Sequence record: LR756504.1
Length of the DNA stretch: 64,000 bases
Direction: 5' to 3' (one strand)
Part shown: in pieces, positions 31,442 to 56,250 of the stretch
Layout of the letters: the number at the start of each line of letters is the position of its first letter
Position numbering within the stretch: the stretch's first letter is position 1
Position numbers and translations under genes: made by a program
The notes under the pieces: model-generated
Told to the model about the DNA's origin: nothing
The model's input: the letters and a program-made list of their open reading frames with translations, nothing else
The model's database searches: none

Positions 31442-33544
31442 ATGGATTTTAAAAAGACATTTATTAGTCTTACGCAGTGGACAATACCTCATGGATATGA
31501 GGAAAGTATTGCACATTTGCTACCTAAAGGAGTACAAAAAGACGGTATTGGTAATTATCATATTACCATTGGTGAAAATAGTAAAACATTGTTTACTTGT
31601 CATTTAGATACTGTTTCTAAAAGAGAGAAAATTCATCATGTTATTAGTGGTAATATTATTAAAACTAATGGTAAAACTATTTTAGGTGGTGACAATAAAG
31701 CTGGTGTATGTATTTTGATGTATCTAATTGAACAAAATGTTCCTGGTACATATTACTTCTTTGTTGGCGAAGAGTGTGGAACAATAGGTTCAAGATGGGC
31801 ATTACAAAATAATACTGAATTTTTTAAAGGATTTAAGAGAGCCGTTGCATATGATAGAAGAGAGCAAGGTTCAATTATTACATATCAAAGAGGTAGAAGA
31901 TGTTGTTCTGATGATTTTGCTAATGCTTTATCAATGGATTTTGCAAAAAATAGAATGGAATATCATATAGATCCCAATGGAGTTTATACGGATACTGCTG
32001 TATTTGTGAATGTAATACCAGAGTGTACTAATTTGTCTGCTGGTGTTGTTGGTGAGCATACTAATAGCGAACATGTAGATATTGAATATTGTGAAAGAGT
32101 AGCTAAAGCTTCTGTTAAAATAGATTGGGAAAATTTACCTGCTATTAGAGAAGCAAAAGAGGAAGATTATAGTAATTATTATAATAGAGGTAATTCACAA
32201 TTCAGAGGTGGTTATACTGTATATGATTACAGAAAGAGGAATGGATTACTTGGTAATAGTAAATGGAAAAAATCAAGAGATCCAGAAGAGGAGGAAGAAG
32301 AGGATGATGATTCGATATTAGCTAATGATGATCATTATCAAGCAACAGGTAGAAGAAATAATATTGTTAATAAACACTTTCATCTTGCAAATAATGAAGA
32401 AGAACATGATTGTGAACATTGTGATGGTGATGGTATACATTCATGTGAAAACTGTGATGGTATGGGTGTTATCGAATGTGATAATTGTGATGGTGTAGGT
32501 AGAAAATATACAGATAAAAATTGTAAAAAATGTAAAGGTGAAGGTACAGTTTTCAATGAAGTTTGTCCTGTGTGTGATGGAGAAGGATATGAATTTACAG
32601 ATTGTAAGAAATGTAAAGGTGTTGGTAATTTAGGTGAGTGTGAAATGTGTGATAGTACAGGAGATGTTGATTGTGTTTTTTGTAATGGCACTGGTATAGA
32701 ATTATTTAATGATGAAGAGGATGATGAAGTAGCTGGGTATGACGATGACGATGATTCTAGTGATTATTCAAGTAGAGGTGGTAGTTTTCTAAACGAAGAT
32801 CCAAATGATTATAATTGGAGAAGATGGAATAATAATGATAAAAATACTAAAAATGGAATTGAAAAATTTGATTCATTTTTAAATAGAAGTAATAAAAATG
32901 ATGGGCATACATCACTATATTCTGAAAATCTAATGGTTGTTAGACAACCAAATGGTTTATTTGGTGTATTTAATGAAAAAACTTCAAATTTTGAAAAATT
33001 TAATCTACTTGATGAAGAAGCACAAGAATTTTTAAATGACGAATTAGATATTTCAAATTTAATAATTCAACATATGATTCAGGCAGCAGTAAATGATAAA
33101 TTATCAAAAGAAAATTCTGAATTCCATAAATCGGATGATGGATTGGGTAGATGGAGATATTGTTTAAATGAACTTTCATCTAAAGTAGGTGGTGAAAATA
33201 TGGTTGAAGAAGCAATAGATGAAATTAAAAAATATATCCTAAAGCACGGTGAAAAAGTTGCAATGGATAAAAAGAAAACTCGTAGAGGTAATAAGAAGTC
33301 TACTAATAGAGAAAATGTTTATGAAAATTTCATAAAGGCTGAAAATAGAAGAGACTTCATTAATGCATTAAAAGGTAGTAGCTTAGAAGAATTTATTGAT
33401 GAAATGAAACATTTATCACCAAAATCTTTAAATATAACCCTAAATGTTATTCTAAACTTTGTTAAAGCAGAAGATTTAGAAAAAGACAAACCTGTCCATA
33501 TAATATTTAATATTTTTAAGAAACAAGTTGACGAATTAATCTAA
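31442..33544 (+). CDS. M20/M28-type metallopeptidase fused to eight CxxCxGxG-type zinc-finger repeats
   Basis: CHLDTV, LGGDNKAG, GEECG, YTD, GEHT; 8 CxxC motifs flanked by acidic tracts. Confidence 0.8.
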   Translation: MDFKKTFISLTQWTIPHGYEESIAHLLPKGVQKDGIGNYHITIGENSKTLFTCHLDTVSKREKIHHVISGNIIKTNGKTILGGDNKAGVCILMYLIEQNVPGTYYFFVGEECGTIGSRWALQNNTEFFKGFKRAVAYDRREQGSIITYQRGRRCCSDDFANALSMDFAKNRMEYHIDPNGVYTDTAVFVNVIPECTNLSAGVVGEHTNSEHVDIEYCERVAKASVKIDWENLPAIREAKEEDYSNYYNRGNSQFRGGYTVYDYRKRNGLLGNSKWKKSRDPEEEEEEDDDSILANDDHYQATGRRNNIVNKHFHLANNEEEHDCEHCDGDGIHSCENCDGMGVIECDNCDGVGRKYTDKNCKKCKGEGTVFNEVCPVCDGEGYEFTDCKKCKGVGNLGECEMCDSTGDVDCVFCNGTGIELFNDEEDDEVAGYDDDDDSSDYSSRGGSFLNEDPNDYNWRRWNNNDKNTKNGIEKFDSFLNRSNKNDGHTSLYSENLMVVRQPNGLFGVFNEKTSNFEKFNLLDEEAQEFLNDELDISNLIIQHMIQAAVNDKLSKENSEFHKSDDGLGRWRYCLNELSSKVGGENMVEEAIDEIKKYILKHGEKVAMDKKKTRRGNKKSTNRENVYENFIKAENRRDFINALKGSSLEEFIDEMKHLSPKSLNITLNVILNFVKAEDLEKDKPVHIIFNIFKKQVDELI

Positions 33545-33641: not shown

Positions 33642-34130
33642 ATGATAAAATTAAATCCAACGATTAAAATTTTGATTGGTCCGCCATGCAGCGGTAAAAC
33701 TTTTTACGTAAATAAAAATGCTTTATCTAACGAAGTAGTAATATCAAGAGATGCTATTATAATGGAATTACATCCCGATTTAAATTATACAGAAGCATAT
33801 AGAGTATGTAATCAGAAAGATGTTAATAGAATATTTAAAGAAAGATTTGACGAATGTGTAGCTAATGGGGTATCTATTATCATAGACAAAACTAATTTAA
33901 CTTCTAAAACAAGAAAAAAACTATTAGCTAAAGTCTCTGTTGATTATACTAAAATAGCGATACTATTTGATTGGGATAAGAAAATATTGTTAGAACGAAA
34001 TATTAAGAGAAATATAGAAGAAGGTAAATTTATATCTGATAAAGTATTTGAAGATATGATAAATTCTTTTGTACCTATAAAAGATATTGAAGGATTTGAC
34101 AAAGTTATATCTTTAAAAATAAGCAAATAA
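33642..34130 (+). CDS. P-loop kinase (AAA_33 / polynucleotide-kinase-like)
   Basis: IGPPCSGKT, ISRD, IIDKTNLTSKTRK, LERNIKR. Confidence 0.85.
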   Translation: MIKLNPTIKILIGPPCSGKTFYVNKNALSNEVVISRDAIIMELHPDLNYTEAYRVCNQKDVNRIFKERFDECVANGVSIIIDKTNLTSKTRKKLLAKVSVDYTKIAILFDWDKKILLERNIKRNIEEGKFISDKVFEDMINSFVPIKDIEGFDKVISLKISK

Positions 34131-34190
34131 AATATGTATGTCAAGTATATGAGAAAAAGGTAGATTAATAATTAGAACTATACTTGTGTG

Positions 34191-34439
34191 ATGGATGTTA
34201 AAAAAGGGGATACTATAATATGTAAAAAAGAATTTACATTAGCTGGTCATAATTTTATACTTAATCAAAAATATATTATTAAAGGTGATGGTATTATTGG
34301 TGGAAAGCGAGTACTTACTATTTCGATAAAAGGTGGAGAACGATATTTAGGAAGTTTACGTAATATTTATGAATCAACTTTAAATAATAATTTTGAAAAT
34401 AAATGGGATAAAAGAAAAAGAATTATTGATGAACTATAA
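34191..34439 (+). CDS. Hypothetical protein
   Basis: VKKGDTIICKK start; C-terminal KRKRIIDEL. Confidence 0.6.
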   Translation: MDVKKGDTIICKKEFTLAGHNFILNQKYIIKGDGIIGGKRVLTISIKGGERYLGSLRNIYESTLNNNFENKWDKRKRIIDEL

Positions 34440-34471
34440 CAAAGAACAATTTTAATCGTTATATATACTGT

Positions 34472-34561
34472 ATGAAACAAATAACAAAATATTAGCCTTT
34501 TTCAATTTTTAACTGAATACCCAATTCAGTAATGCTAATATATTGTATAATCAAAAAATAA
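34472..34561 (+). promoter_or_regulatory. Leader uORF MKQITKY-UAG with further in-frame UGA and UAA and a nested hairpin, upstream of the release factor gene
   Basis: ATG 34472, TAG 34493-95, TGA 34514-16, TAA 34559-61; stems 34489-96/34534-41 and 34512-18/34524-30. Confidence 0.5.
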
Positions 34562-34570
34562 TTTACAAAA

Positions 34571-35245
34571 ATGGAAAAGATAATTTTAGAAATTCGTCAA
34601 GCCGAAGGTGGTGATGATGCGAAACTACTTACAGAAGATATGGCTAATATTTATATCAAAGCATCCAATATTCAAAACTTCAAAGTTAAACCTATTGAGT
34701 GAAGAGATGGCTTCATAACACTTTCTGTTGAAGGTGAAGGCGTGAAGCAATATTTTTCAAATGAAAGCGGTATTCATTGTTGGAATAGAGTTCCTCCTAC
34801 AGAAAAAAGAGGAAGAATGCAAACTAGTTATGTATCAGTATCCATTTTATCTCAATATAAAAAAACGTTTAATATGAATTGTGATGATGTGAGAGTTCTT
34901 TATACAAAAGGCTCTGGTCCTGGGGGACAAGCAAAGAATAAATTAGAAACTTGTGTGGTATTAATGCACATTCCTACTAATATATCTGTTAGAATTGATG
35001 GTAGAAGTAGAGTTCATAATGAAAAAGAAGCTTGGAGAATATTAGAAGATAGATTAAAAAAAGTTCATAACAATATAGAAGATAGTATTGAAAACACTAA
35101 TAGGTTTGATCAAATTGGATATGGTAAAAGAGGTAATAAAAAAAGGAGTTATAAAGTAAAAGACAACTTAGTTATTGATCATGATACTAATAAGAAAATT
35201 CAATTAAAAGATATTCTTAAAGGTAGAATCGAACTTCTTAAATAA
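34571..35245 (+). CDS. prfA: RF1-like class I peptide chain release factor lacking domain 1, with in-frame TGA at codon 44
   Basis: MEKIILEIRQAEGGDDAKLL...KPIE*RDGF...NESGIHCWNRVPPTEKRGRMQTS (PxT motif)...GSGPGGQ; TGA at 34700-02 is in frame with the track ORF 34742-35245. Confidence 0.85.
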
Positions 35246-35308
35246 GATATTGCTTAATTTCTTTCAAAACAATGAAAATTAAAGATTTATCAAAAATGTT
35301 TAAAAATA

Positions 35309-35340
35309 TTTGCTTAATTAGAAAATACCTATTATATTTG
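35309..35340 (+). promoter_or_regulatory. Bacteroidota-type housekeeping promoter (telA)
   Basis: TTTG-N20-TATATTTG. Confidence 0.75.
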
Positions 35341-35367
35341 TAAAAAAGAAATAAACCGACATCATAT

Positions 35368-36492
35368 ATGAACTCAGAAAAATCATTAAAAACAGTAGAA
35401 ATTAATAAAGTAAAGCCAGAAGTTTTAGCGAAAGCTCAAAGTCTTGTCAAAACTATTGATATTTCTAAACAGGATAGTATTACTAACCTTGGATTAGAAA
35501 CTCAGCAAAAGTTGAGTTCTATGAATAATGCAATTCTTGATGAAGTTCGAACAAAAGATTCGGGTGAAGTAGGTAAAACTATTAATGAATTACTTACTCA
35601 AATCAATGCCATTGATGTTGATTTAAAACCAAGCCCACTTGCAAGCATTCCAATTATTGGAAGTTTTCTTGCTAAAATGTTTGATAAAGGAAAAGAAATT
35701 GTTTCTAAATATGAATCAGTTAAAACTAATATCAATGGTATAGTTTTAAAGCTTGATAAAAGTCGCTTAGGATTAAGAAAAGACAATAATAATTTTCAAA
35801 CTATGTTTGAAAAGAATGTTATAAACATTTCTGATTTGGATGCTGCTATTGTTGCAGGTAAAATGAAAGTTGAAGAATTGAGTGGTGTCGTAGCATCATT
35901 CAGTCCTGAAGATGGTATTGAGGATTATGAGAAAAAAGATACCGTTAACTTTTTGGATAGACTTGAAAAGAAAGTATATGACTTGCAATTAACAAGACAT
36001 ATTACTATTCAATCATTGCCTCAAATTAGATTGATTCAATCAAACAATCAATTGCTCGAAGATAAAATTTTAAGTTCAATTAACAATACCATTCCAATTT
36101 GGCAACAACAAATGGTTATTGGACTTGGTATTCAAAGACAAAAAAATGTGTTAGAAGTTGCTAAAAATATGGATGATGCAACAAATATAATGATTGTTAA
36201 AAATTCCGAGAATCTTAAATTTAACACAATTGAAGCTGCTAAAGCTAACGAGCGTGGAATTATTGACGTGGCTTCTTTGAAGAAAGTGAATGAAGATATA
36301 ATGTCCACTCTTGATGAACTAGTTAAAATTAAAGAAGATGGAAAGAAAGCAAGACAACAAGCTGAGGTAGAACTTTCAATGATTGAAAGTGAATTGAAAA
36401 ATAAAATCCTTACAATCAAACAAGGTACATCAGCAACAGATGTTGAACCAAATGTTAAAATTATCAATATAGACGAGCCAGAAAATGTCTAA
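35368..36492 (+). CDS. telA: Toxic anion resistance protein TelA family
   Basis: QDSITNLGLETQQKL, QSLPQIRLIQSNNQLL, NTIPIWQQQM, NERGIIDVASL. Confidence 0.9.
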   Translation: MNSEKSLKTVEINKVKPEVLAKAQSLVKTIDISKQDSITNLGLETQQKLSSMNNAILDEVRTKDSGEVGKTINELLTQINAIDVDLKPSPLASIPIIGSFLAKMFDKGKEIVSKYESVKTNINGIVLKLDKSRLGLRKDNNNFQTMFEKNVINISDLDAAIVAGKMKVEELSGVVASFSPEDGIEDYEKKDTVNFLDRLEKKVYDLQLTRHITIQSLPQIRLIQSNNQLLEDKILSSINNTIPIWQQQMVIGLGIQRQKNVLEVAKNMDDATNIMIVKNSENLKFNTIEAAKANERGIIDVASLKKVNEDIMSTLDELVKIKEDGKKARQQAEVELSMIESELKNKILTIKQGTSATDVEPNVKIINIDEPENV

Positions 36493-54764: not shown

Positions 54765-54844
54765 GCTCCCATGGTGGAATGGCAGACACGCTCGGCTTAA
54801 AATCGAGTGCCTTGTGCATACAGGTTCAAGTCCTGTTGGGAGTA
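54765..54844 (+). tRNA. tRNA-Leu(UAA)
   Basis: GCTCCCA/TGGGAGT-A acceptor, CTCGG-CTTAAAA-TCGAG, long variable arm, TTCAAGT T-loop; no encoded CCA. Confidence 0.92.
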
Positions 54845-54857
54845 CTAATTATCACAT

Positions 54858-54943
54858 GCCCTTGTGATGTAATGCAGCCATGAACGCCTTAGAAGCGTTT
54901 GCGAAGTAATAGTAGCGTGTAGGTTCGAGTCCTACCAAGGGTA
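54858..54943 (+). tRNA. tRNA-Leu(UAG)
   Basis: GCCCTTG/CAAGGGT-A, AACGC-CTTAGAA-GCGTT, long variable arm. Confidence 0.92.
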
Positions 54944-54952
54944 CACAATAAT

Positions 54953-55041
54953 GGAGGGAATCTGGCTGGATGAAGAGCCAATCTTGAAAATTGGTAAATC
55001 GGTGATGAACTGGTTTGTGGGTTCGAGTCCCACTTCCTCCT
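54953..55041 (+). tRNA. tRNA-Ser(UGA)
   Basis: GGAGGGA/TTCCTCC-T, CCAAT-CTTGAAA-ATTGG, long variable arm. Confidence 0.9.
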
Positions 55042-55047
55042 CAAAAT

Positions 55048-55120
55048 GGTACTATGGCCGAGTGGATATAGGCGCACGTCTGCAAAACGTGATACATCAG
55101 TTCGAACCTGATTAGTACCT
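55048..55120 (+). tRNA. tRNA-Cys(GCA)
   Basis: GGTACTA/TAGTACC-T (U73), CACGT-CTGCAAA-ACGTG. Confidence 0.93.
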
Positions 55121-55127
55121 CAAAAAT

Positions 55128-55214
55128 GGAGAGTAGGCAAATATTGGTTTGTTGCGGCATCCTGCTAAGATGTTCCGTATAAAAGCGGTGAGGGTTCAAT
55201 TCCCTTGCTCTCCT
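55128..55214 (+). tRNA. tRNA-Ser(GCU)
   Basis: GGAGAGT/GCTCTCC-T, GCATC-CTGCTAA-GATGT, long variable arm, enlarged D region. Confidence 0.88.
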
Positions 55215-55293
55215 CAAATAAAGTTCTATTGTGTAAATATTATCACACTTAAACGTAGCCGAACTTTTTGATATATAATATCAAAAAAAAGCT

Positions 55294-55998
55294 ATGAGTT
55301 TAAAAAGTGAGAAAATATTAAAGTATGCTAAAAAAATTAGAGCGATTGAATTATTAGGTGGTTGTTGCATTGAATGTGGTGTTGATAATATACATAAATT
55401 ATGTTTTCACCATATAAATAGAAATGATAAAAAATTTGATATTTCGGATAAATTAGGATTAAAGTGGAACAAAATAAAAGATGAAGTTATAAAATGTGAG
55501 TTATTATGTTTAAATTGTCATACAGAAAAACATTATAATGAAATTTCTGATAAAAAAGATATAAAAAGAAGGAGTGAAAAAAAACTATTTATTTCAATAA
55601 AGGGTGATTCATGTGAATATTGTAATTATAATAAGTGTGATGCAACATTAGAATTTCATCATCATAATGATAATAAAAATTTCTCTATAGGGAAAAAAAG
55701 ATTAACTAAAAATAATTTATTATTATTTATAGAAGAAATAAACAAGTGTACTTTATTATGTAAAAATTGCCATATTCATTTACATAAAGATAGTTTCTAT
55801 GATGATAATAAAGATGAAATAATAAAAAAGAAAAATGATTATATTGATTTAAATAAAATTGATTTAGATAAATTTTTTGAATTATATAATGGTGGGTATA
55901 AACAAGTTGAAATATCAAAACTGTTAAATTGTTCAAAAAGTAGAATCTCAGAATTAGTTTCAAAATATTTTAAAGGGAAGAATACTCAAGTGATTTAA
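55294..55998 (+). CDS. HNH homing endonuclease with two HNH-like modules and C-terminal HTH
   Basis: CIEC..FHH...CLNCH and CEYC..FHH...CKNCH; QVEISKLLNCSKSRIS; inserted in the tRNA cluster. Confidence 0.85.
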   Translation: MSLKSEKILKYAKKIRAIELLGGCCIECGVDNIHKLCFHHINRNDKKFDISDKLGLKWNKIKDEVIKCELLCLNCHTEKHYNEISDKKDIKRRSEKKLFISIKGDSCEYCNYNKCDATLEFHHHNDNKNFSIGKKRLTKNNLLLFIEEINKCTLLCKNCHIHLHKDSFYDDNKDEIIKKKNDYIDLNKIDLDKFFELYNGGYKQVEISKLLNCSKSRISELVSKYFKGKNTQVI

Positions 55999-56066
55999 GA
56001 GGATACATTGGAAATGTATTAGATCGGGATTAACCTGGTGCGTGAGTTTGAATCTCACTTCTTCCA
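55976..56066 (+). tRNA. tRNA-Ser(GGA)
   Basis: GGAAGAA/TTCTTCC-A, ATACA-TTGGAAA-TGTAT, long variable arm; first 23 nt overlap the end of the HNH ORF. Confidence 0.85.
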
Positions 56067-56071
56067 CAAAT

Positions 56072-56145
56072 GGCTTAGTGATGTAATTGGTAAACGTGTT
56101 CGGTTCAAACCCGAAATTTTATAGGTTCGAGTCCTATCTAAGCTA
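56072..56145 (+). tRNA. tRNA-Leu(CAA) with short variable loop
   Basis: GGCTTAG/CTAAGCT-A, TTCGG-TTCAAAC-CCGAA, 5-nt variable loop ATTTT. Confidence 0.82.
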
Positions 56146-56156
56146 CAATAATAAAT

Positions 56157-56231
56157 GCCATTGTGGTGGAATTGGTTATACACACTAGTCTAAGAAACTA
56201 GGAATTGCAGGTTCGACTCCTGTCAATGGTA
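56157..56231 (+). tRNA. tRNA-Leu(AAG) with A34 and short variable loop
   Basis: GCCATTG/CAATGGT-A, CTAGT-CTAAGAA-ACTAG, 5-nt variable loop GAATT, Leu-like D arm. Confidence 0.85.
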
Positions 56232-56250
56232 CTAAAAAATATATATTTAT

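What the first reader, a model, noticed from the sequence alone, without database searches (positions are those of the whole stretch)
34444..34573. Stop-codon-sensing leader in front of the release factor gene
Seen: ATG AAA CAA ATA ACA AAA TAT TAG, then TGA at codon 15 and TAA at codon 30, so all three stops are in one frame, which is also the frame of the RF start codon at 34571. The UAG and UGA each lie in the 5' strand of nested stems (ATATTAGC/GCTAATAT and ACTGAAT/ATTCAGT). No U-tract follows, so control would be translational. Inference: ribosome dwell or readthrough at UAG/UGA when host RF1/RF2 is limiting remodels the hairpins and turns on the phage RF.
Basis: partly seen in the sequence, partly recalled or inferred. 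Interest (0 to 1): 0.66.

Follow-up and report, generated by a model that had tools for sequence, protein, structure and literature searches.

The report
Stop-gated phage release factor gene
A huge soil phage carries a shortened release-factor gene interrupted by its own in-frame stop codon and preceded by a small conserved RNA leader, so the factor that ends protein synthesis is probably made only when ending is inefficient.

Summary
Only part of it is more than chance.

**What holds up.** Four related phage lineages carry the same leader. All five have:
- a 7-codon upstream ORF (uORF) ending in UAG-C;
- a sequence-invariant outer stem that holds that UAG;
- an inner hairpin that keeps pairing through compensatory changes.

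**What does not hold up.** The UGA in the inner stem occurs in 3 of 5 lineages. The shared frame with the RF start occurs in 2 of 5. The TAA is background. The leader is confined to this small subclade.

**The stronger signal is inside the gene.** The ORF (34571-35245) has an in-frame TGA at codon 44 (34700-34702), although the 636-kb genome uses the standard code. The protein is an RF1-type factor (PPT and GGQ motifs) that lacks domain 1.

**Family pattern.** Among 71 distinct relatives:
- 50 have one or two in-frame stops at a few hot-spot columns, and every stop is followed by A or C;
- 11 need a +1 shift there, 10 of them at CTT-TGA or CTT-TAG, some preceded by an SD-like GGAGG as in prfB;
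- 10 have neither.

**Reading.** Full-length RF needs programmed read-through, so output should rise when termination at that codon is weak. The leader is a real accessory element, but its stop-sensing role is unproven. I found no prior report.

The parts
34438..34471 (+). Conserved block upstream of the uORF (AACAAAG ... CGTTATATATACTG). It marks the 5' edge of the cassette. It may be a promoter or an AU-rich ribosome loading region (inferred).
   Evidence: Similarity among window, L302, L125 and L128 starts here, while the upstream genes are unrelated. CGTTATATATA occurs only twice in the 636-kb genome.
34472..34495 (+). uORF: ATG, 6 more sense codons (MKQITKY), then TAG, followed by C.
   Evidence: Read. 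The same position, length and TAG-C are kept in 5 of 5 lineages, while the peptide body varies (MKQITKY, MISMAKY, MIRITKY, MIRMTKY).
34485..34496 (+). 5' strand of the outer stem (ACAA-A-ATATTAGC). It contains the last uORF codons and the UAG.
   Evidence: Folds. The 8 core pairs are invariant or wobble in 5 lineages.
34497..34511 (+). U-rich asymmetric internal loop (CUUUUUCAAUUUUUA). Its sequence is largely conserved.
   Evidence: Invariant columns in A3. Pairing with the RBS was tested and is not significant in the window.
34512..34530 (+). Inner hairpin ACTGAAT-ACCCA-ATTCAGT. The TGA at 34514-16 lies in its 5' strand.
   Evidence: 7 pairs, 100% paired, 4 with compensatory changes. The TGA is present in only 3 of 5 lineages.
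34534..34545 (+). 3' strand of the outer stem (GCTAATAT-A-TTGT).
34546..34570 (+). Unstructured A-rich stretch before the RF start. It includes an extended -10-like TGTATAAT (34545-34552).
   Evidence: Unpaired in all folds. -10-like hexamers are kept loosely (TATAAT, TACAAT, TATAAA) in A3. Promoter role is inferred only.
34571..35245 (+). Release-factor gene: 224 codons, RF1-type, without domain 1, interrupted by one in-frame TGA.
   Evidence: Pfam PCRF (residues 3-90) and RF-1 (100-204) span the TGA. NCBIfam scores RF1 at 159 bits and RF2 at 108 bits. Residues 4-218 align with T. thermophilus RF1 residues 107-330.
34700..34702 (+). In-frame TGA at codon 44, followed by AGA. This is the programmed stop that must be read through to make full-length RF.
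   Evidence: It is kept in 5 of 5 close lineages while neighbouring codons change synonymously. It sits in one of the family's hot-spot columns. The genome otherwise uses the standard code.
34793..34801 (+). PPT tripeptide (codons 75-77), the RF1-type PxT stop-codon reader.
   Evidence: sequence; translation; P75, P76, T77 and E78 are invariant or nearly invariant in the family.
34922..34930 (+). GGQ catalytic motif (codons 118-120).
34766..35171 (+). Core of the RF gene. It is strongly diverged between otherwise near-identical strains, which gives a mosaic allele.
   Evidence: reported as 'skips 404, same length, diverged' in runs X2 and X3; the N-terminal 60 residues are 90% identical and the rest 48-56%.

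Best explanation
The region is the 5' control module of a mobile release-factor cassette in a huge, standard-code phage.

**The gene.** It encodes an RF1-type class-I release factor that starts at domain 2. It has the PPT reader and the GGQ catalytic motif, and it lacks domain 1.

**The primary stop-dependent control lies inside the ORF.** Codon 44 is UGA, in a leaky UGA-A context.
- Ribosomes that terminate there make only a 43-residue peptide.
- Ribosomes that read through make the full factor. The inserted residue is unknown; near-cognate Trp-tRNA is the usual route (background knowledge).
- By its motifs the phage factor should not read UGA. The gate is therefore set by the cell's RF2 activity competing with tRNA, and output rises when UGA termination is weak.

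**Relatives solve the same problem in other ways.** Some use UAG, which their own product should read, giving true feedback. GC-richer phages use a prfB-like SD-CUU-UGA/UAG +1 frameshift at the same hot spots.

It is a translated-looking 7-codon uORF ending in a weak UAG-C. That stop sits inside an invariant stem, which encloses a covarying hairpin.

**Shown:** the in-frame stop, its conservation and context, the standard code of the genome, and the conservation and covariation of the leader.

**Inferred:** that read-through happens, that it responds to release-factor activity, and that the uORF is translated and affects RF initiation.
For: **In-frame TGA with homology on both sides.**

**The genome uses the standard code.**
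- Coding density is 0.877 under code 11, 0.870 under code 4 and 0.876 under code 15.
- TGA ends 99 of 764 ORFs.
- There is no UCA suppressor among 38 tRNAs.
- No other Pfam domain clearly spans an internal TGA. One weak case is listed under things noticed in passing.
- A second complete genome (LR745206) gives the same picture, and its RF has two TGAs.

**Family census.**
- 397 IMG/VR contigs encode relatives.
- Of 71 distinct proteins among the best 80 loci: 50 have in-frame stops (65 TGA and 5 TAG), 11 need a +1 shift (10 of them at CTT-TGA or CTT-TAG), and 10 have none.
- The stops fall in six alignment columns, mostly in four of them. Frameshift sites fall at two of the same hot spots.
- All 70 in-frame stops are followed by A (33) or C (37), never G or T.
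- SD-like GGAGG or AGGGG precedes CTT by about 3 nt in the GC-richer loci, as in prfB (PMC12421855).
- AT-rich loci show about zero internal TGA in flanking ORFs.

**TGA-44 is held by selection.** It is invariant in five lineages while the adjacent codons vary synonymously.

**RF1 type.**
- NCBIfam scores RF1 at 159 bits and RF2 at 108 bits.
- PPTE is invariant in the family.

**Leader.** Searches show the uORF in 5 of 5 lineages, inner-helix covariation, and 97.9% of cells paired.
Against: - There is no expression or protein evidence. No RNA run holds the locus.
- The inserted residue is unknown.
- An RF1-type factor gated by an RF2 codon has no obvious homeostatic logic. The gate could be a fixed attenuator rather than a sensor.
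- Relatives with two UGAs would give very low yield unless read-through is boosted by something I did not find.
- His193 of RF1 is Gln here and Gln181 is Asn. Codon specificity is therefore not certain.
- No covarying stimulatory structure follows the TGA.
- For the leader, the hairpin does not occlude the RBS and no effector pairing was found.
- A terminator-plus-promoter or mRNA-stabiliser reading of the leader is not excluded.
Confidence: 0.6

Rival explanations
1. **The reader's full model.** The leader's UAG and UGA are both sensed. Ribosome dwell or read-through at them, in the frame of the RF start, remodels the nested hairpins and switches RF translation on.
For: - The uORF with UAG in the outer stem is kept in 5 of 5 lineages.
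- The stems are conserved and covary.
- UAG-C is a weak termination context (background knowledge). It is also the context of the family's TAG gates.
- A second in-frame stop falls at codon 15 in 4 of 5 lineages (TGA three times, TAA once).
Against: - TGA is absent from two lineages.
- The frame link to the RF ATG holds in only 2 of 5.
- The RBS is unpaired in all folds.
- Loop-RBS duplex energy is not better than controls in the window.
- The leader is absent from most of the family.
- In-frame stops are background in this genome: 3.4 per 33 codons.
Confidence: 0.12
2. **Structural or transcriptional element, no stop sensing.** The leader is real but does not sense stops. It could be a 5' stem-loop that stabilises or processes the mRNA. 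It could be a protein-binding operator. Or it could be an insulating hairpin at the cassette's edge, followed by the RF promoter (extended -10 TGTATAAT at 34545-34552). On this reading the uORF ATG and TAG persist only because they lie in conserved sequence blocks.
For: - The outer stem is sequence-invariant rather than covarying. That fits a sequence-specific partner.
- -10-like hexamers are kept after the stem.
- The cassette moves between unrelated neighbourhoods, so it needs its own signals.
- The hairpin does not touch the RBS.
Against: - There is no U-tract, so it is not a canonical terminator.
- The uORF keeps its exact length with no indel, although its body is almost fully substituted. 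It also survives in L303, where the upstream block has diverged.
- G-U wobbles place the structure in the sense-strand RNA. At least some transcripts must therefore start upstream of 34512.
Confidence: 0.3
3. **The TGA is not programmed.** It reflects a genome-wide TGA-sense code, a pseudogene, a split gene, or an assembly error.
For: - Code-4 phages that carry RF1 are known, for example the Jade phages (bioRxiv 10.1101/2021.08.26.457843).
- Gene callers split the ORF into 43-aa and 123-167-aa products.
Against: - The genome and a relative's genome use the standard code.
- The TGA is present in independent assemblies and studies.
- The N-terminal 43 residues carry invariant RF residues (E7, G13, G14, D16, K18) and are 90% conserved.
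- The stop is conserved while synonymous sites drift.
- The strict +4 A or C rule and the frameshift cassettes at the same hot spots argue for selection.
Confidence: 0.04
4. **The gate is a fixed throttle, not a sensor.** A leaky UGA simply keeps a potentially toxic factor at a few percent of what its mRNA could yield, independent of release-factor status.
For: - RF overexpression is harmful in bacteria (PMC12421855).
- UGA is insulated from an RF1-type product, so there is no feedback loop.
- 10 of 71 relatives do without any gate.
Against: - A weak start site would achieve the same at less cost.
- Parallel use of UAG gates and of prfB-type cassettes points to selection for responsiveness, because prfB cassettes are known feedback devices.
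- Read-through at any stop inevitably depends on competing RF activity.
Confidence: 0.2

Closest known systems
prfB (RF2) autoregulatory +1 programmed frameshift (SD-like, CUU UGA C)
   Same: - A release-factor gene is interrupted early by a stop codon, and passage through it competes with termination.
- 10 of 71 relatives use CTT-TGA or CTT-TAG as the shift site. About half of them carry GGAGG or AGGGG roughly 3 nt upstream.
   Different: - The window's gene has a zero-frame UGA with no CUU and no SD, so it needs read-through rather than a frameshift.
- The factor is RF1-type and lacks domain 1. The gate lies in domain 2, at codons 38-55, not at codon 26 of domain 1.
- Some relatives use CUU UAG. 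That was found in none of 8,164 bacterial prfB genes (PMC12421855).
- With UGA the loop is not closed by the gene's own product.
Leaky UGA read-through in phages and viruses (Q-beta A1 protein; UGA-A and UGA-C contexts read by Trp-tRNA in E. coli)
   Same: An in-frame UGA followed by A or C in the zero frame, with the product extended past the stop. All 70 family stops obey the A-or-C rule.
   Different: - Here the short product is probably waste and only the long one is functional.
- The gene is itself a termination factor.
- The context rules are recalled from the E. coli literature and were not tested in the unknown host.
Code-change modules of TGA-recoded phages (Jade phages: suppressor tRNA, TrpRS and RF1)
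   Same: A phage-encoded RF1 is linked to the handling of UGA (bioRxiv 10.1101/2021.08.26.457843).
   Different: - Those RF1 genes are written in the standard code, and the rest of the phage is recoded.
- Here it is the reverse. The genome uses the standard code, has no UCA suppressor, and the RF gene is the one that clearly carries an in-frame TGA.
Stop-codon-dependent leader peptides (tnaC: RF2 action at UGA is blocked and the stalled ribosome controls downstream expression)
   Same: A short uORF with a stop codon at a defined place in a structured leader upstream of the regulated gene. The uORF is kept in 5 of 5 lineages.
   Different: - No conserved peptide except the C-terminal Lys-Tyr.
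- No Rho or terminator element is evident.
- No link to the RBS was found.
- Translation of the uORF is unproven.
PrfH (RF-H) and ArfB, the other truncated class-I RF relatives
   Same: No domain 1, about 200-230 residues, with GGQ.
   Different: - The phage protein scores far better as RF1 (159 bits) than as PrfH (63 bits, cut-off 167) or ArfB (20 bits).
- It keeps the PxT reader.

Membership tests
Class-I release factor RF1 (prfA) | PxT stop-codon reading tripeptide | tested here: met
   PPT at codons 75-77. PPTE is invariant in the family. It aligns with PVT184-186 of T. thermophilus RF1.
Class-I release factor RF1 (prfA) | GGQ catalytic motif | tested here: met
   GGQ at codons 118-120, invariant in the family.
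Class-I release factor RF1 (prfA) | Scores higher as RF1 than as RF2 and reaches the equivalog cut-off | tested here: inconclusive
   RF1 models score 159 and 156 bits against 108 bits for RF2. Both are far below the cut-offs of 400 and 423 bits.
Class-I release factor RF1 (prfA) | Four-domain architecture including N-terminal domain 1 | tested here: not met
   The protein starts at the equivalent of RF1 residue 104. The Pfam PCRF match covers only profile positions 101-194. All relatives start at the same point.
Class-I release factor RF1 (prfA) | Conserved decoding residues Gln181 and His193 (T. thermophilus numbering) | tested here: not met
   The window has Asn and Gln at these positions. 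Close relatives L302, L125, L128 and L303 keep Gln and His.
Class-I release factor RF1 (prfA) | Releases peptide at UAA and UAG but not UGA | not testable with these tools
   Needs an in vitro release assay.
prfB-type programmed +1 frameshift | Slippery CUU followed by an in-frame stop, with the downstream ORF in the +1 frame | tested here: not met
   In the window the codons are GAG TGA AGA and the ORF continues in the zero frame. The feature is met in 10 distinct relatives and in LR745208.
prfB-type programmed +1 frameshift | SD-like purine tract about 3 nt upstream of CUU | tested here: not met
   Absent in the window. Present in GC-richer relatives (L111, L115, L116, L120, L121, L005).
Programmed stop-codon read-through | Conserved in-frame stop with homology on both sides and a non-random context | tested here: met
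   The stop is kept in 5 of 5 close lineages, falls in a hot-spot column, and the +4 base is A or C in 70 of 70 cases.
Programmed stop-codon read-through | A full-length product is actually made | not testable with these tools
   No RNA or protein data.
Genome-wide TGA reassignment (code 4 or 25) | Many genes with internal TGA, higher coding density under the alternative code, and a UCA-anticodon tRNA | tested here: not met
Intrinsic terminator or attenuator | GC-rich hairpin followed by a U-tract | tested here: not met
   0 terminator-like sites. The stems have 2 G-C pairs each, and AAUGCUAAUAU follows.
Regulatory leader peptide (uORF) | uORF start, length and stop conserved in relatives | tested here: met
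   5 of 5 lineages.
Regulatory leader peptide (uORF) | The uORF is translated and its stop codon or peptide controls the downstream gene | not testable with these tools
   No ribosome profiling is available. No structural link to the RBS was found.
Any described RNA family (Rfam 15) | A covariance-model match | tested here: not met
   No match at E up to 5 in 34000-35300.
PrfH (RF-H) | Reaches the PrfH model cut-off | tested here: not met
   62.8 bits against a cut-off of 166.65.

The most novel reading that the evidence does not exclude
The cassette is a two-input sensor of the cell's termination state. The uORF's weak UAG-C reports RF1-type capacity at the level of initiation. The in-ORF UGA-A reports RF2 capacity at the level of elongation. 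The phage therefore makes its own domain-1-less release factor only when the host's release-factor balance is disturbed. More broadly, phages have repeatedly evolved UGA and UAG read-through gates and prfB-like frameshift cassettes to control a private release factor. These include CUU-UAG cassettes, an RF1-style feedback loop not found in bacterial prfB genes.
Probability: 0.15. Interest if true: 0.9.

Novelty: new variant of a known kind. Interest (0 to 1): 0.72.

Why it matters
**Why it matters.**
- Autoregulation of a release factor by its own stop codon is a textbook case known only for bacterial RF2.
- Here a large, unstudied family of phage release factors (397 viral contigs) shows the same principle in new forms:
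  - zero-frame read-through at UGA or UAG in AT-rich phages;
  - prfB-like frameshift cassettes, some using the RF1 codon UAG, in GC-richer ones;
  - in one clade, an added uORF-hairpin leader.
- Gene callers split these genes, so catalogues of phage translation genes under-count or mis-annotate them.
- It raises a directly testable question: why does a standard-code phage need a private, domain-1-less RF1, and why tie its synthesis to poor termination?
- It offers natural, compact read-through and frameshift cassettes for recoding research.

Tried and rejected
1. **Code 4, 15 or TAA-sense for the genome.** Rejected. Coding density does not improve, and TGA is a common true stop. Code 4 was used only as a device to read through the single TGA. 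The residue inserted there is unknown.
2. **Suppressor tRNA.** There is no UCA anticodon in LR756504 (38 tRNAs) or LR745206 (59 tRNAs). The odd-loop tRNAs do not fit a UCA reader.
3. **Other genes with internal TGA or TAG.** Pfam domains stop at the TGA in the candidates tested. The one weak exception is listed under things noticed in passing. The halves around four candidate TAGs gave no spanning domain.
4. **Leader as a repeated genomic element.** The motif is unique in the genome.
5. **Motif scans** of viral and metagenome contigs with AATATTAGCC-N(25-45)-GCTAATAT returned only chance inverted repeats, none next to an RF. A coding-motif scan of viral contigs found only the phage itself.
6. 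**Long-range pairing** of 34487-97 with RF codons 24-27 (11 nt complementary). It is not kept in L125 or L302, so I dropped it.
7. **U-rich loop pairing with the RBS.** Not better than shuffles in the window.
8. **Stimulatory structure 3' of TGA-44.** No covariation.
9. **uORF-stop-in-stem as a family-wide trait.** 10 of 71 against 27 of 238 in controls.
10. **Trp as the ancestral residue at the TGA columns.** I first inferred this from database proteins. I withdrew it because DNA-based relatives show S, E, K or T there, and the database W may itself be a code-4 translation.
11. **RNA evidence.** No RNA run holds the locus.
12. **Rfam.** No match.
Full report
**1. Setting**

The window is part of a huge uncultured phage.
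- It is 100% identical to LR756504.1, a 636,363-bp record. That record comes from the 'huge phages' survey, whose largest genomes (over 634 kb) were predicted to infect Bacteroidetes (PMC7162821).
- The held genome G000 is a 348-kb rotated piece of that record.
- GC content is 26-27%.
- The only DNA run holding the whole locus is a soil metagenome. No RNA run holds it.

**2. Checking the observation**

- uORF ATG at 34472;
- TAG at 34493-95 (codon 8);
- TGA at 34514-16 (codon 15);
- TAA at 34559-61 (codon 30);
- RF ATG at 34571, 99 nt after the uORF ATG;
- stems ATATTAGC/GCTAATAT (34489-96 with 34534-41) and ACTGAAT/ATTCAGT (34512-18 with 34524-30);
- no U-tract and no terminator call.

RNAfold gives exactly this nested fold.

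On one sequence alone, none of this is unusual for the genome:
- The 141-nt spacer has z = -1.46.
- 5% of arbitrary 61-mers fold at or below -11.5 kcal/mol, and 35% of 100-180-nt spacers contain such a window.
- ORFs with at least 99 nt of non-coding sequence upstream carry on average 3.4 in-frame stops per 33 codons.
- 39 of 271 such ORFs show all three stop kinds, and 14 of 271 also have an in-frame ATG.

**3.

The RF ORF itself is interrupted.
- Under the standard code it stops at TGA 34700-34702 (codon 44) and resumes in the same frame to 35245.
- The Pfam PCRF match (residues 3-90) crosses the TGA, and RF-1 follows it.
- The protein aligns with T. thermophilus RF1 residues 107-330, so domain 1 is missing.
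- It has PPT (the RF1-type PxT reader) and GGQ.
- It scores 159 bits as RF1, 108 as RF2 and 63 as PrfH.
- I used code 4 only as a device to read through this one codon. The genome does not use code 4.

**4. The genome uses the standard code**

- For the complete 636-kb record, coding density from ORFs of at least 80 aa is 0.877 (code 11), 0.870 (code 4) and 0.876 (code 15), with no region that differs.
- Stops are TAA 588, TGA 99 and TAG 77.
- TGG is used at 11 per 1000 codons (on the 348-kb G000 piece).
- ARAGORN finds 38 tRNAs, none with a UCA anticodon and no tRNA-Trp.
- Among ORFs joined by a single internal TGA, only the RF has a strong domain running across it. The others end at the TGA.
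- A relative's complete genome (LR745206, 635 kb) behaves the same way. Densities are 0.886, 0.885 and 0.884, and it has 59 tRNAs including Trp-CCA but no UCA suppressor. Its RF carries two in-frame TGAs.

**5. The family**

tblastn and profile-guided scans show a large family of roughly 225-residue, domain-1-less, PPTE/GGQ release factors in phage contigs. Relatives occur in 397 IMG/VR contigs.

Among the best 80 loci there are 71 distinct proteins:

| Class | Count |
|---|---|
| One or two in-frame stops | 50 (65 TGA and 5 TAG in all) |
| Need a +1 shift | 11 |
| Neither | 10 |

- The stops lie in six alignment columns. Four of them dominate, corresponding to window codons 39, 44, 48 and 52. 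Frameshift sites fall at two of the same hot spots, around codons 38-39 and 52-54.
- Every one of the 70 in-frame stops is followed by A (33) or C (37), never G or T.
- Ten of the eleven shift sites are CTT-TGA or CTT-TAG. In the GC-richer loci, GGAGG or AGGGG lies about 3 nt upstream, which is the prfB arrangement (PMC12421855).
- LR756511 has no start codon on the RF frame. It has a leader ORF with AGGTG-N3-CTT-TAA-C, then 15 codons, then CTT-TGA-C leading into the RF frame (read by eye).
- Flanking ORFs of the AT-rich loci have essentially no internal TGA, so the trait is gene-specific.
- The N-terminal segment before the stops carries invariant RF residues (E7, G13, G14, D16, K18), so it must be joined to the rest.

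**6. Close relatives and the leader**

The distant relatives first examined have 25-68-nt spacers and no synteny. Across the family, 25 of 71 spacers are 40 nt or shorter. The leader is therefore not a family trait.

Following the neighbouring TelA gene and a second protein search gave four further lineages that do carry it:
- L302, an approximately 88%-identical soil strain that is also seen in runs X2 and X3;
- L125/L126;
- L128;
- L303.

Their upstream genes are unrelated. One relative (L127) has AAA_33 next to TelA with no RF between them. L128 has a weak NUMOD4 (homing-endonuclease-type) match in the gene beside the RF. L303 sits in a different neighbourhood. The leader therefore travels with the RF as a cassette.

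In all five lineages:
- The uORF has the same start position, 7 sense codons and TAG-C, with a variable body (MKQITKY twice, MISMAKY, MIRITKY, MIRMTKY).
- The outer stem is invariant, apart from wobble changes in its core and two unpaired cells in its 4-bp extension.
- The inner stem differs in sequence but always pairs (ACUGAAU/AUUCAGU, ACUGAGU/AUUCAGU, AUCGGAU/AUUCGAU, AGAUAAAU/AUUUAUCU, GUUGAAU/AUUCAGC).

Pair counting gives 97.9% of cells paired, against 39% or less for slid partners. The inner helix is 100% paired, with 4 of 7 pairs changed on both sides. G-U wobbles place the structure in the sense-strand RNA.

Third-codon-position identity between the window and L125 in RF codons 1-60 is only 0.55. 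The invariant leader blocks are therefore under selection.

Not conserved:
- TGA at codon 15 (3 of 5 lineages; TAA once; one lineage has its next stop at codon 17);
- the TAA;
- the frame link to the RF ATG (2 of 5).

TGA-44 is kept in 5 of 5 while the flanking codons vary synonymously.

**7. Mechanism**

Shown:
- Making a full-length factor requires passing an in-frame stop.
- That stop is conserved and sits in a selected context. Its position recurs across the family, where other members use a known termination-sensing frameshift device at the same spots.

Inferred:
- Read-through competes with release-factor action. For UGA, near-cognate Trp-tRNA is the usual route, which is background knowledge.
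- By its PxT motif the phage factor should read UAA and UAG. The UGA gate should then report host RF2 activity, and the UAG-gated relatives would be true feedback loops.

Caveats:
- Q181N and H193Q in the window's protein leave its specificity open.
- Double-UGA genes imply either very low yield or an unknown booster.
- The gate might be a fixed throttle.
- No covarying RNA structure follows the TGA.

For the leader I can show conservation but not function.
- The RBS region 34546-34570 is single-stranded in every fold.
- U-loop to RBS pairing is not significant in the window.
- A ribosome paused on UAG-C would open the outer stem, but I see no consequence for initiation.
- Alternatives are an mRNA-stabilising or protein-binding stem-loop, or an insulating hairpin ahead of an extended -10 promoter (TGTATAAT at 34545-52).

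**8. Comparison with what is known**

- The closest system is prfB frameshift autoregulation. The window's gene fails its defining features (CUU, SD, +1 frame), although relatives meet them.
- Bacterial RF1 genes are not known to be regulated this way, and no prfB uses TAG (PMC12421855).
- TGA-recoded Jade phages carry RF1 written in the standard code, which is the opposite arrangement (10.1101/2021.08.26.457843).
- Papers on huge and jumbo phages list RF1 or RF2 without noting interrupted genes.
- Five further full-text searches found no report of programmed stops in phage RF genes. Absence from this library is not proof of novelty.
- There is no Rfam match.

**9. Verdict**

About half of it is signal: the uORF, its UAG and the nested stems. 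The rest is AT-rich background: the TGA, the TAA and the shared frame.
The robust stop-codon-dependent control is the in-ORF TGA at 34700-34702, which is part of a family-wide recoding trait.
- I rate it a new variant of a known kind, with interest 0.72.

Noticed in passing
window 34766-35171 (RF codons 66-200): The catalytic and decoding core of the RF gene is strongly diverged between strains whose flanks are about 88-97% identical. The soil strain L302 has window-like flanks but an L128-like core. This suggests allele swapping or fast evolution of the core. The window's allele alone has Q181N and H193Q.
   Followed up: partly
L090/L091, L105, L115, L124 (IMG/VR loci), around codon 38 or 52-55 of the RF: +1 frameshift sites of the form CTT TAG C in RF1-type genes. 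This would be an RF1-specific counterpart of the prfB cassette. TAG was found in none of 8,164 bacterial prfB motifs (PMC12421855).
   Followed up: partly
L004 (LR756511.1), 120 nt upstream of the RF frame: The RF has no start codon of its own. A strong-SD leader ORF (MKKKVKNQVCL) ends in AGGTG-TGT-CTT-TAA-C. Fifteen codons later, in the +1 frame, CTT-TGA-C leads into the RF frame. That makes two successive programmed shifts.
   Followed up: no
LR756504.1 c136122-136197, c402360-402435, c461088-461164, c281045-281120 (outside the window): Three Glu-like tRNAs have 6-nt anticodon loops (UUUUCA in two of them). One tRNA has an 8-nt loop, AUUCUAAC. It could be read as a CUA (amber) anticodon with U33 and A37, or as Arg-UCU. 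The halves around four candidate in-frame TAGs showed no domain spanning the stop.
   Followed up: partly
L127, L128, L303 compared with window 33642-36492: The RF cassette is mobile. One relative has AAA_33 kinase directly next to TelA with no RF. Another has a gene with a weak NUMOD4 (homing-endonuclease-type) match beside the RF. A third carries the cassette in an unrelated neighbourhood.
   Followed up: partly
L049, L053, L071 (IMG/VR), 100 nt upstream of their RF genes: Another AT-rich subclade has its own conserved leader: ACATAAnTATTAGCG, a covarying hairpin (GTGAGT/ACTCAC or GTGATT/AATCAC), then AAACAATTTATTG. In the MFE folds a 5' segment pairs with the RF start-codon region.
   Followed up: no
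window 34487-34497 and 34642-34652: The 5' strand of the outer stem (AAATATTAGCC) is also perfectly complementary to RF codons 24-27 (GGCTAATATTT). This is not kept in L125 (one mismatch) or L302 (a wobble), so it is probably chance.
   Followed up: yes
window 54765-56232: A cluster of eight tRNA genes: Leu-TAA, Leu-TAG, Ser-TGA, Cys-GCA, Ser-GCT, Ser-GGA, Leu-CAA and Leu-AAG.
   Followed up: no
LR756504.1 88966-89421 (- strand, outside the window): A 151-codon frame with a weak TyrRS C-terminal-domain match (E = 2.4e-4) that runs across an in-frame TGA. It is the only other candidate for a TGA-interrupted gene.
   Followed up: no
window 31442-33544, 33642-34130, 35368-36492: Neighbouring genes: a 700-aa protein with a weak DnaJ-type zinc-finger match (below Pfam's gathering cut-off), an AAA_33 kinase-like protein, and a TelA-like (toxic anion resistance) protein with a very strong Pfam match.
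   Followed up: no
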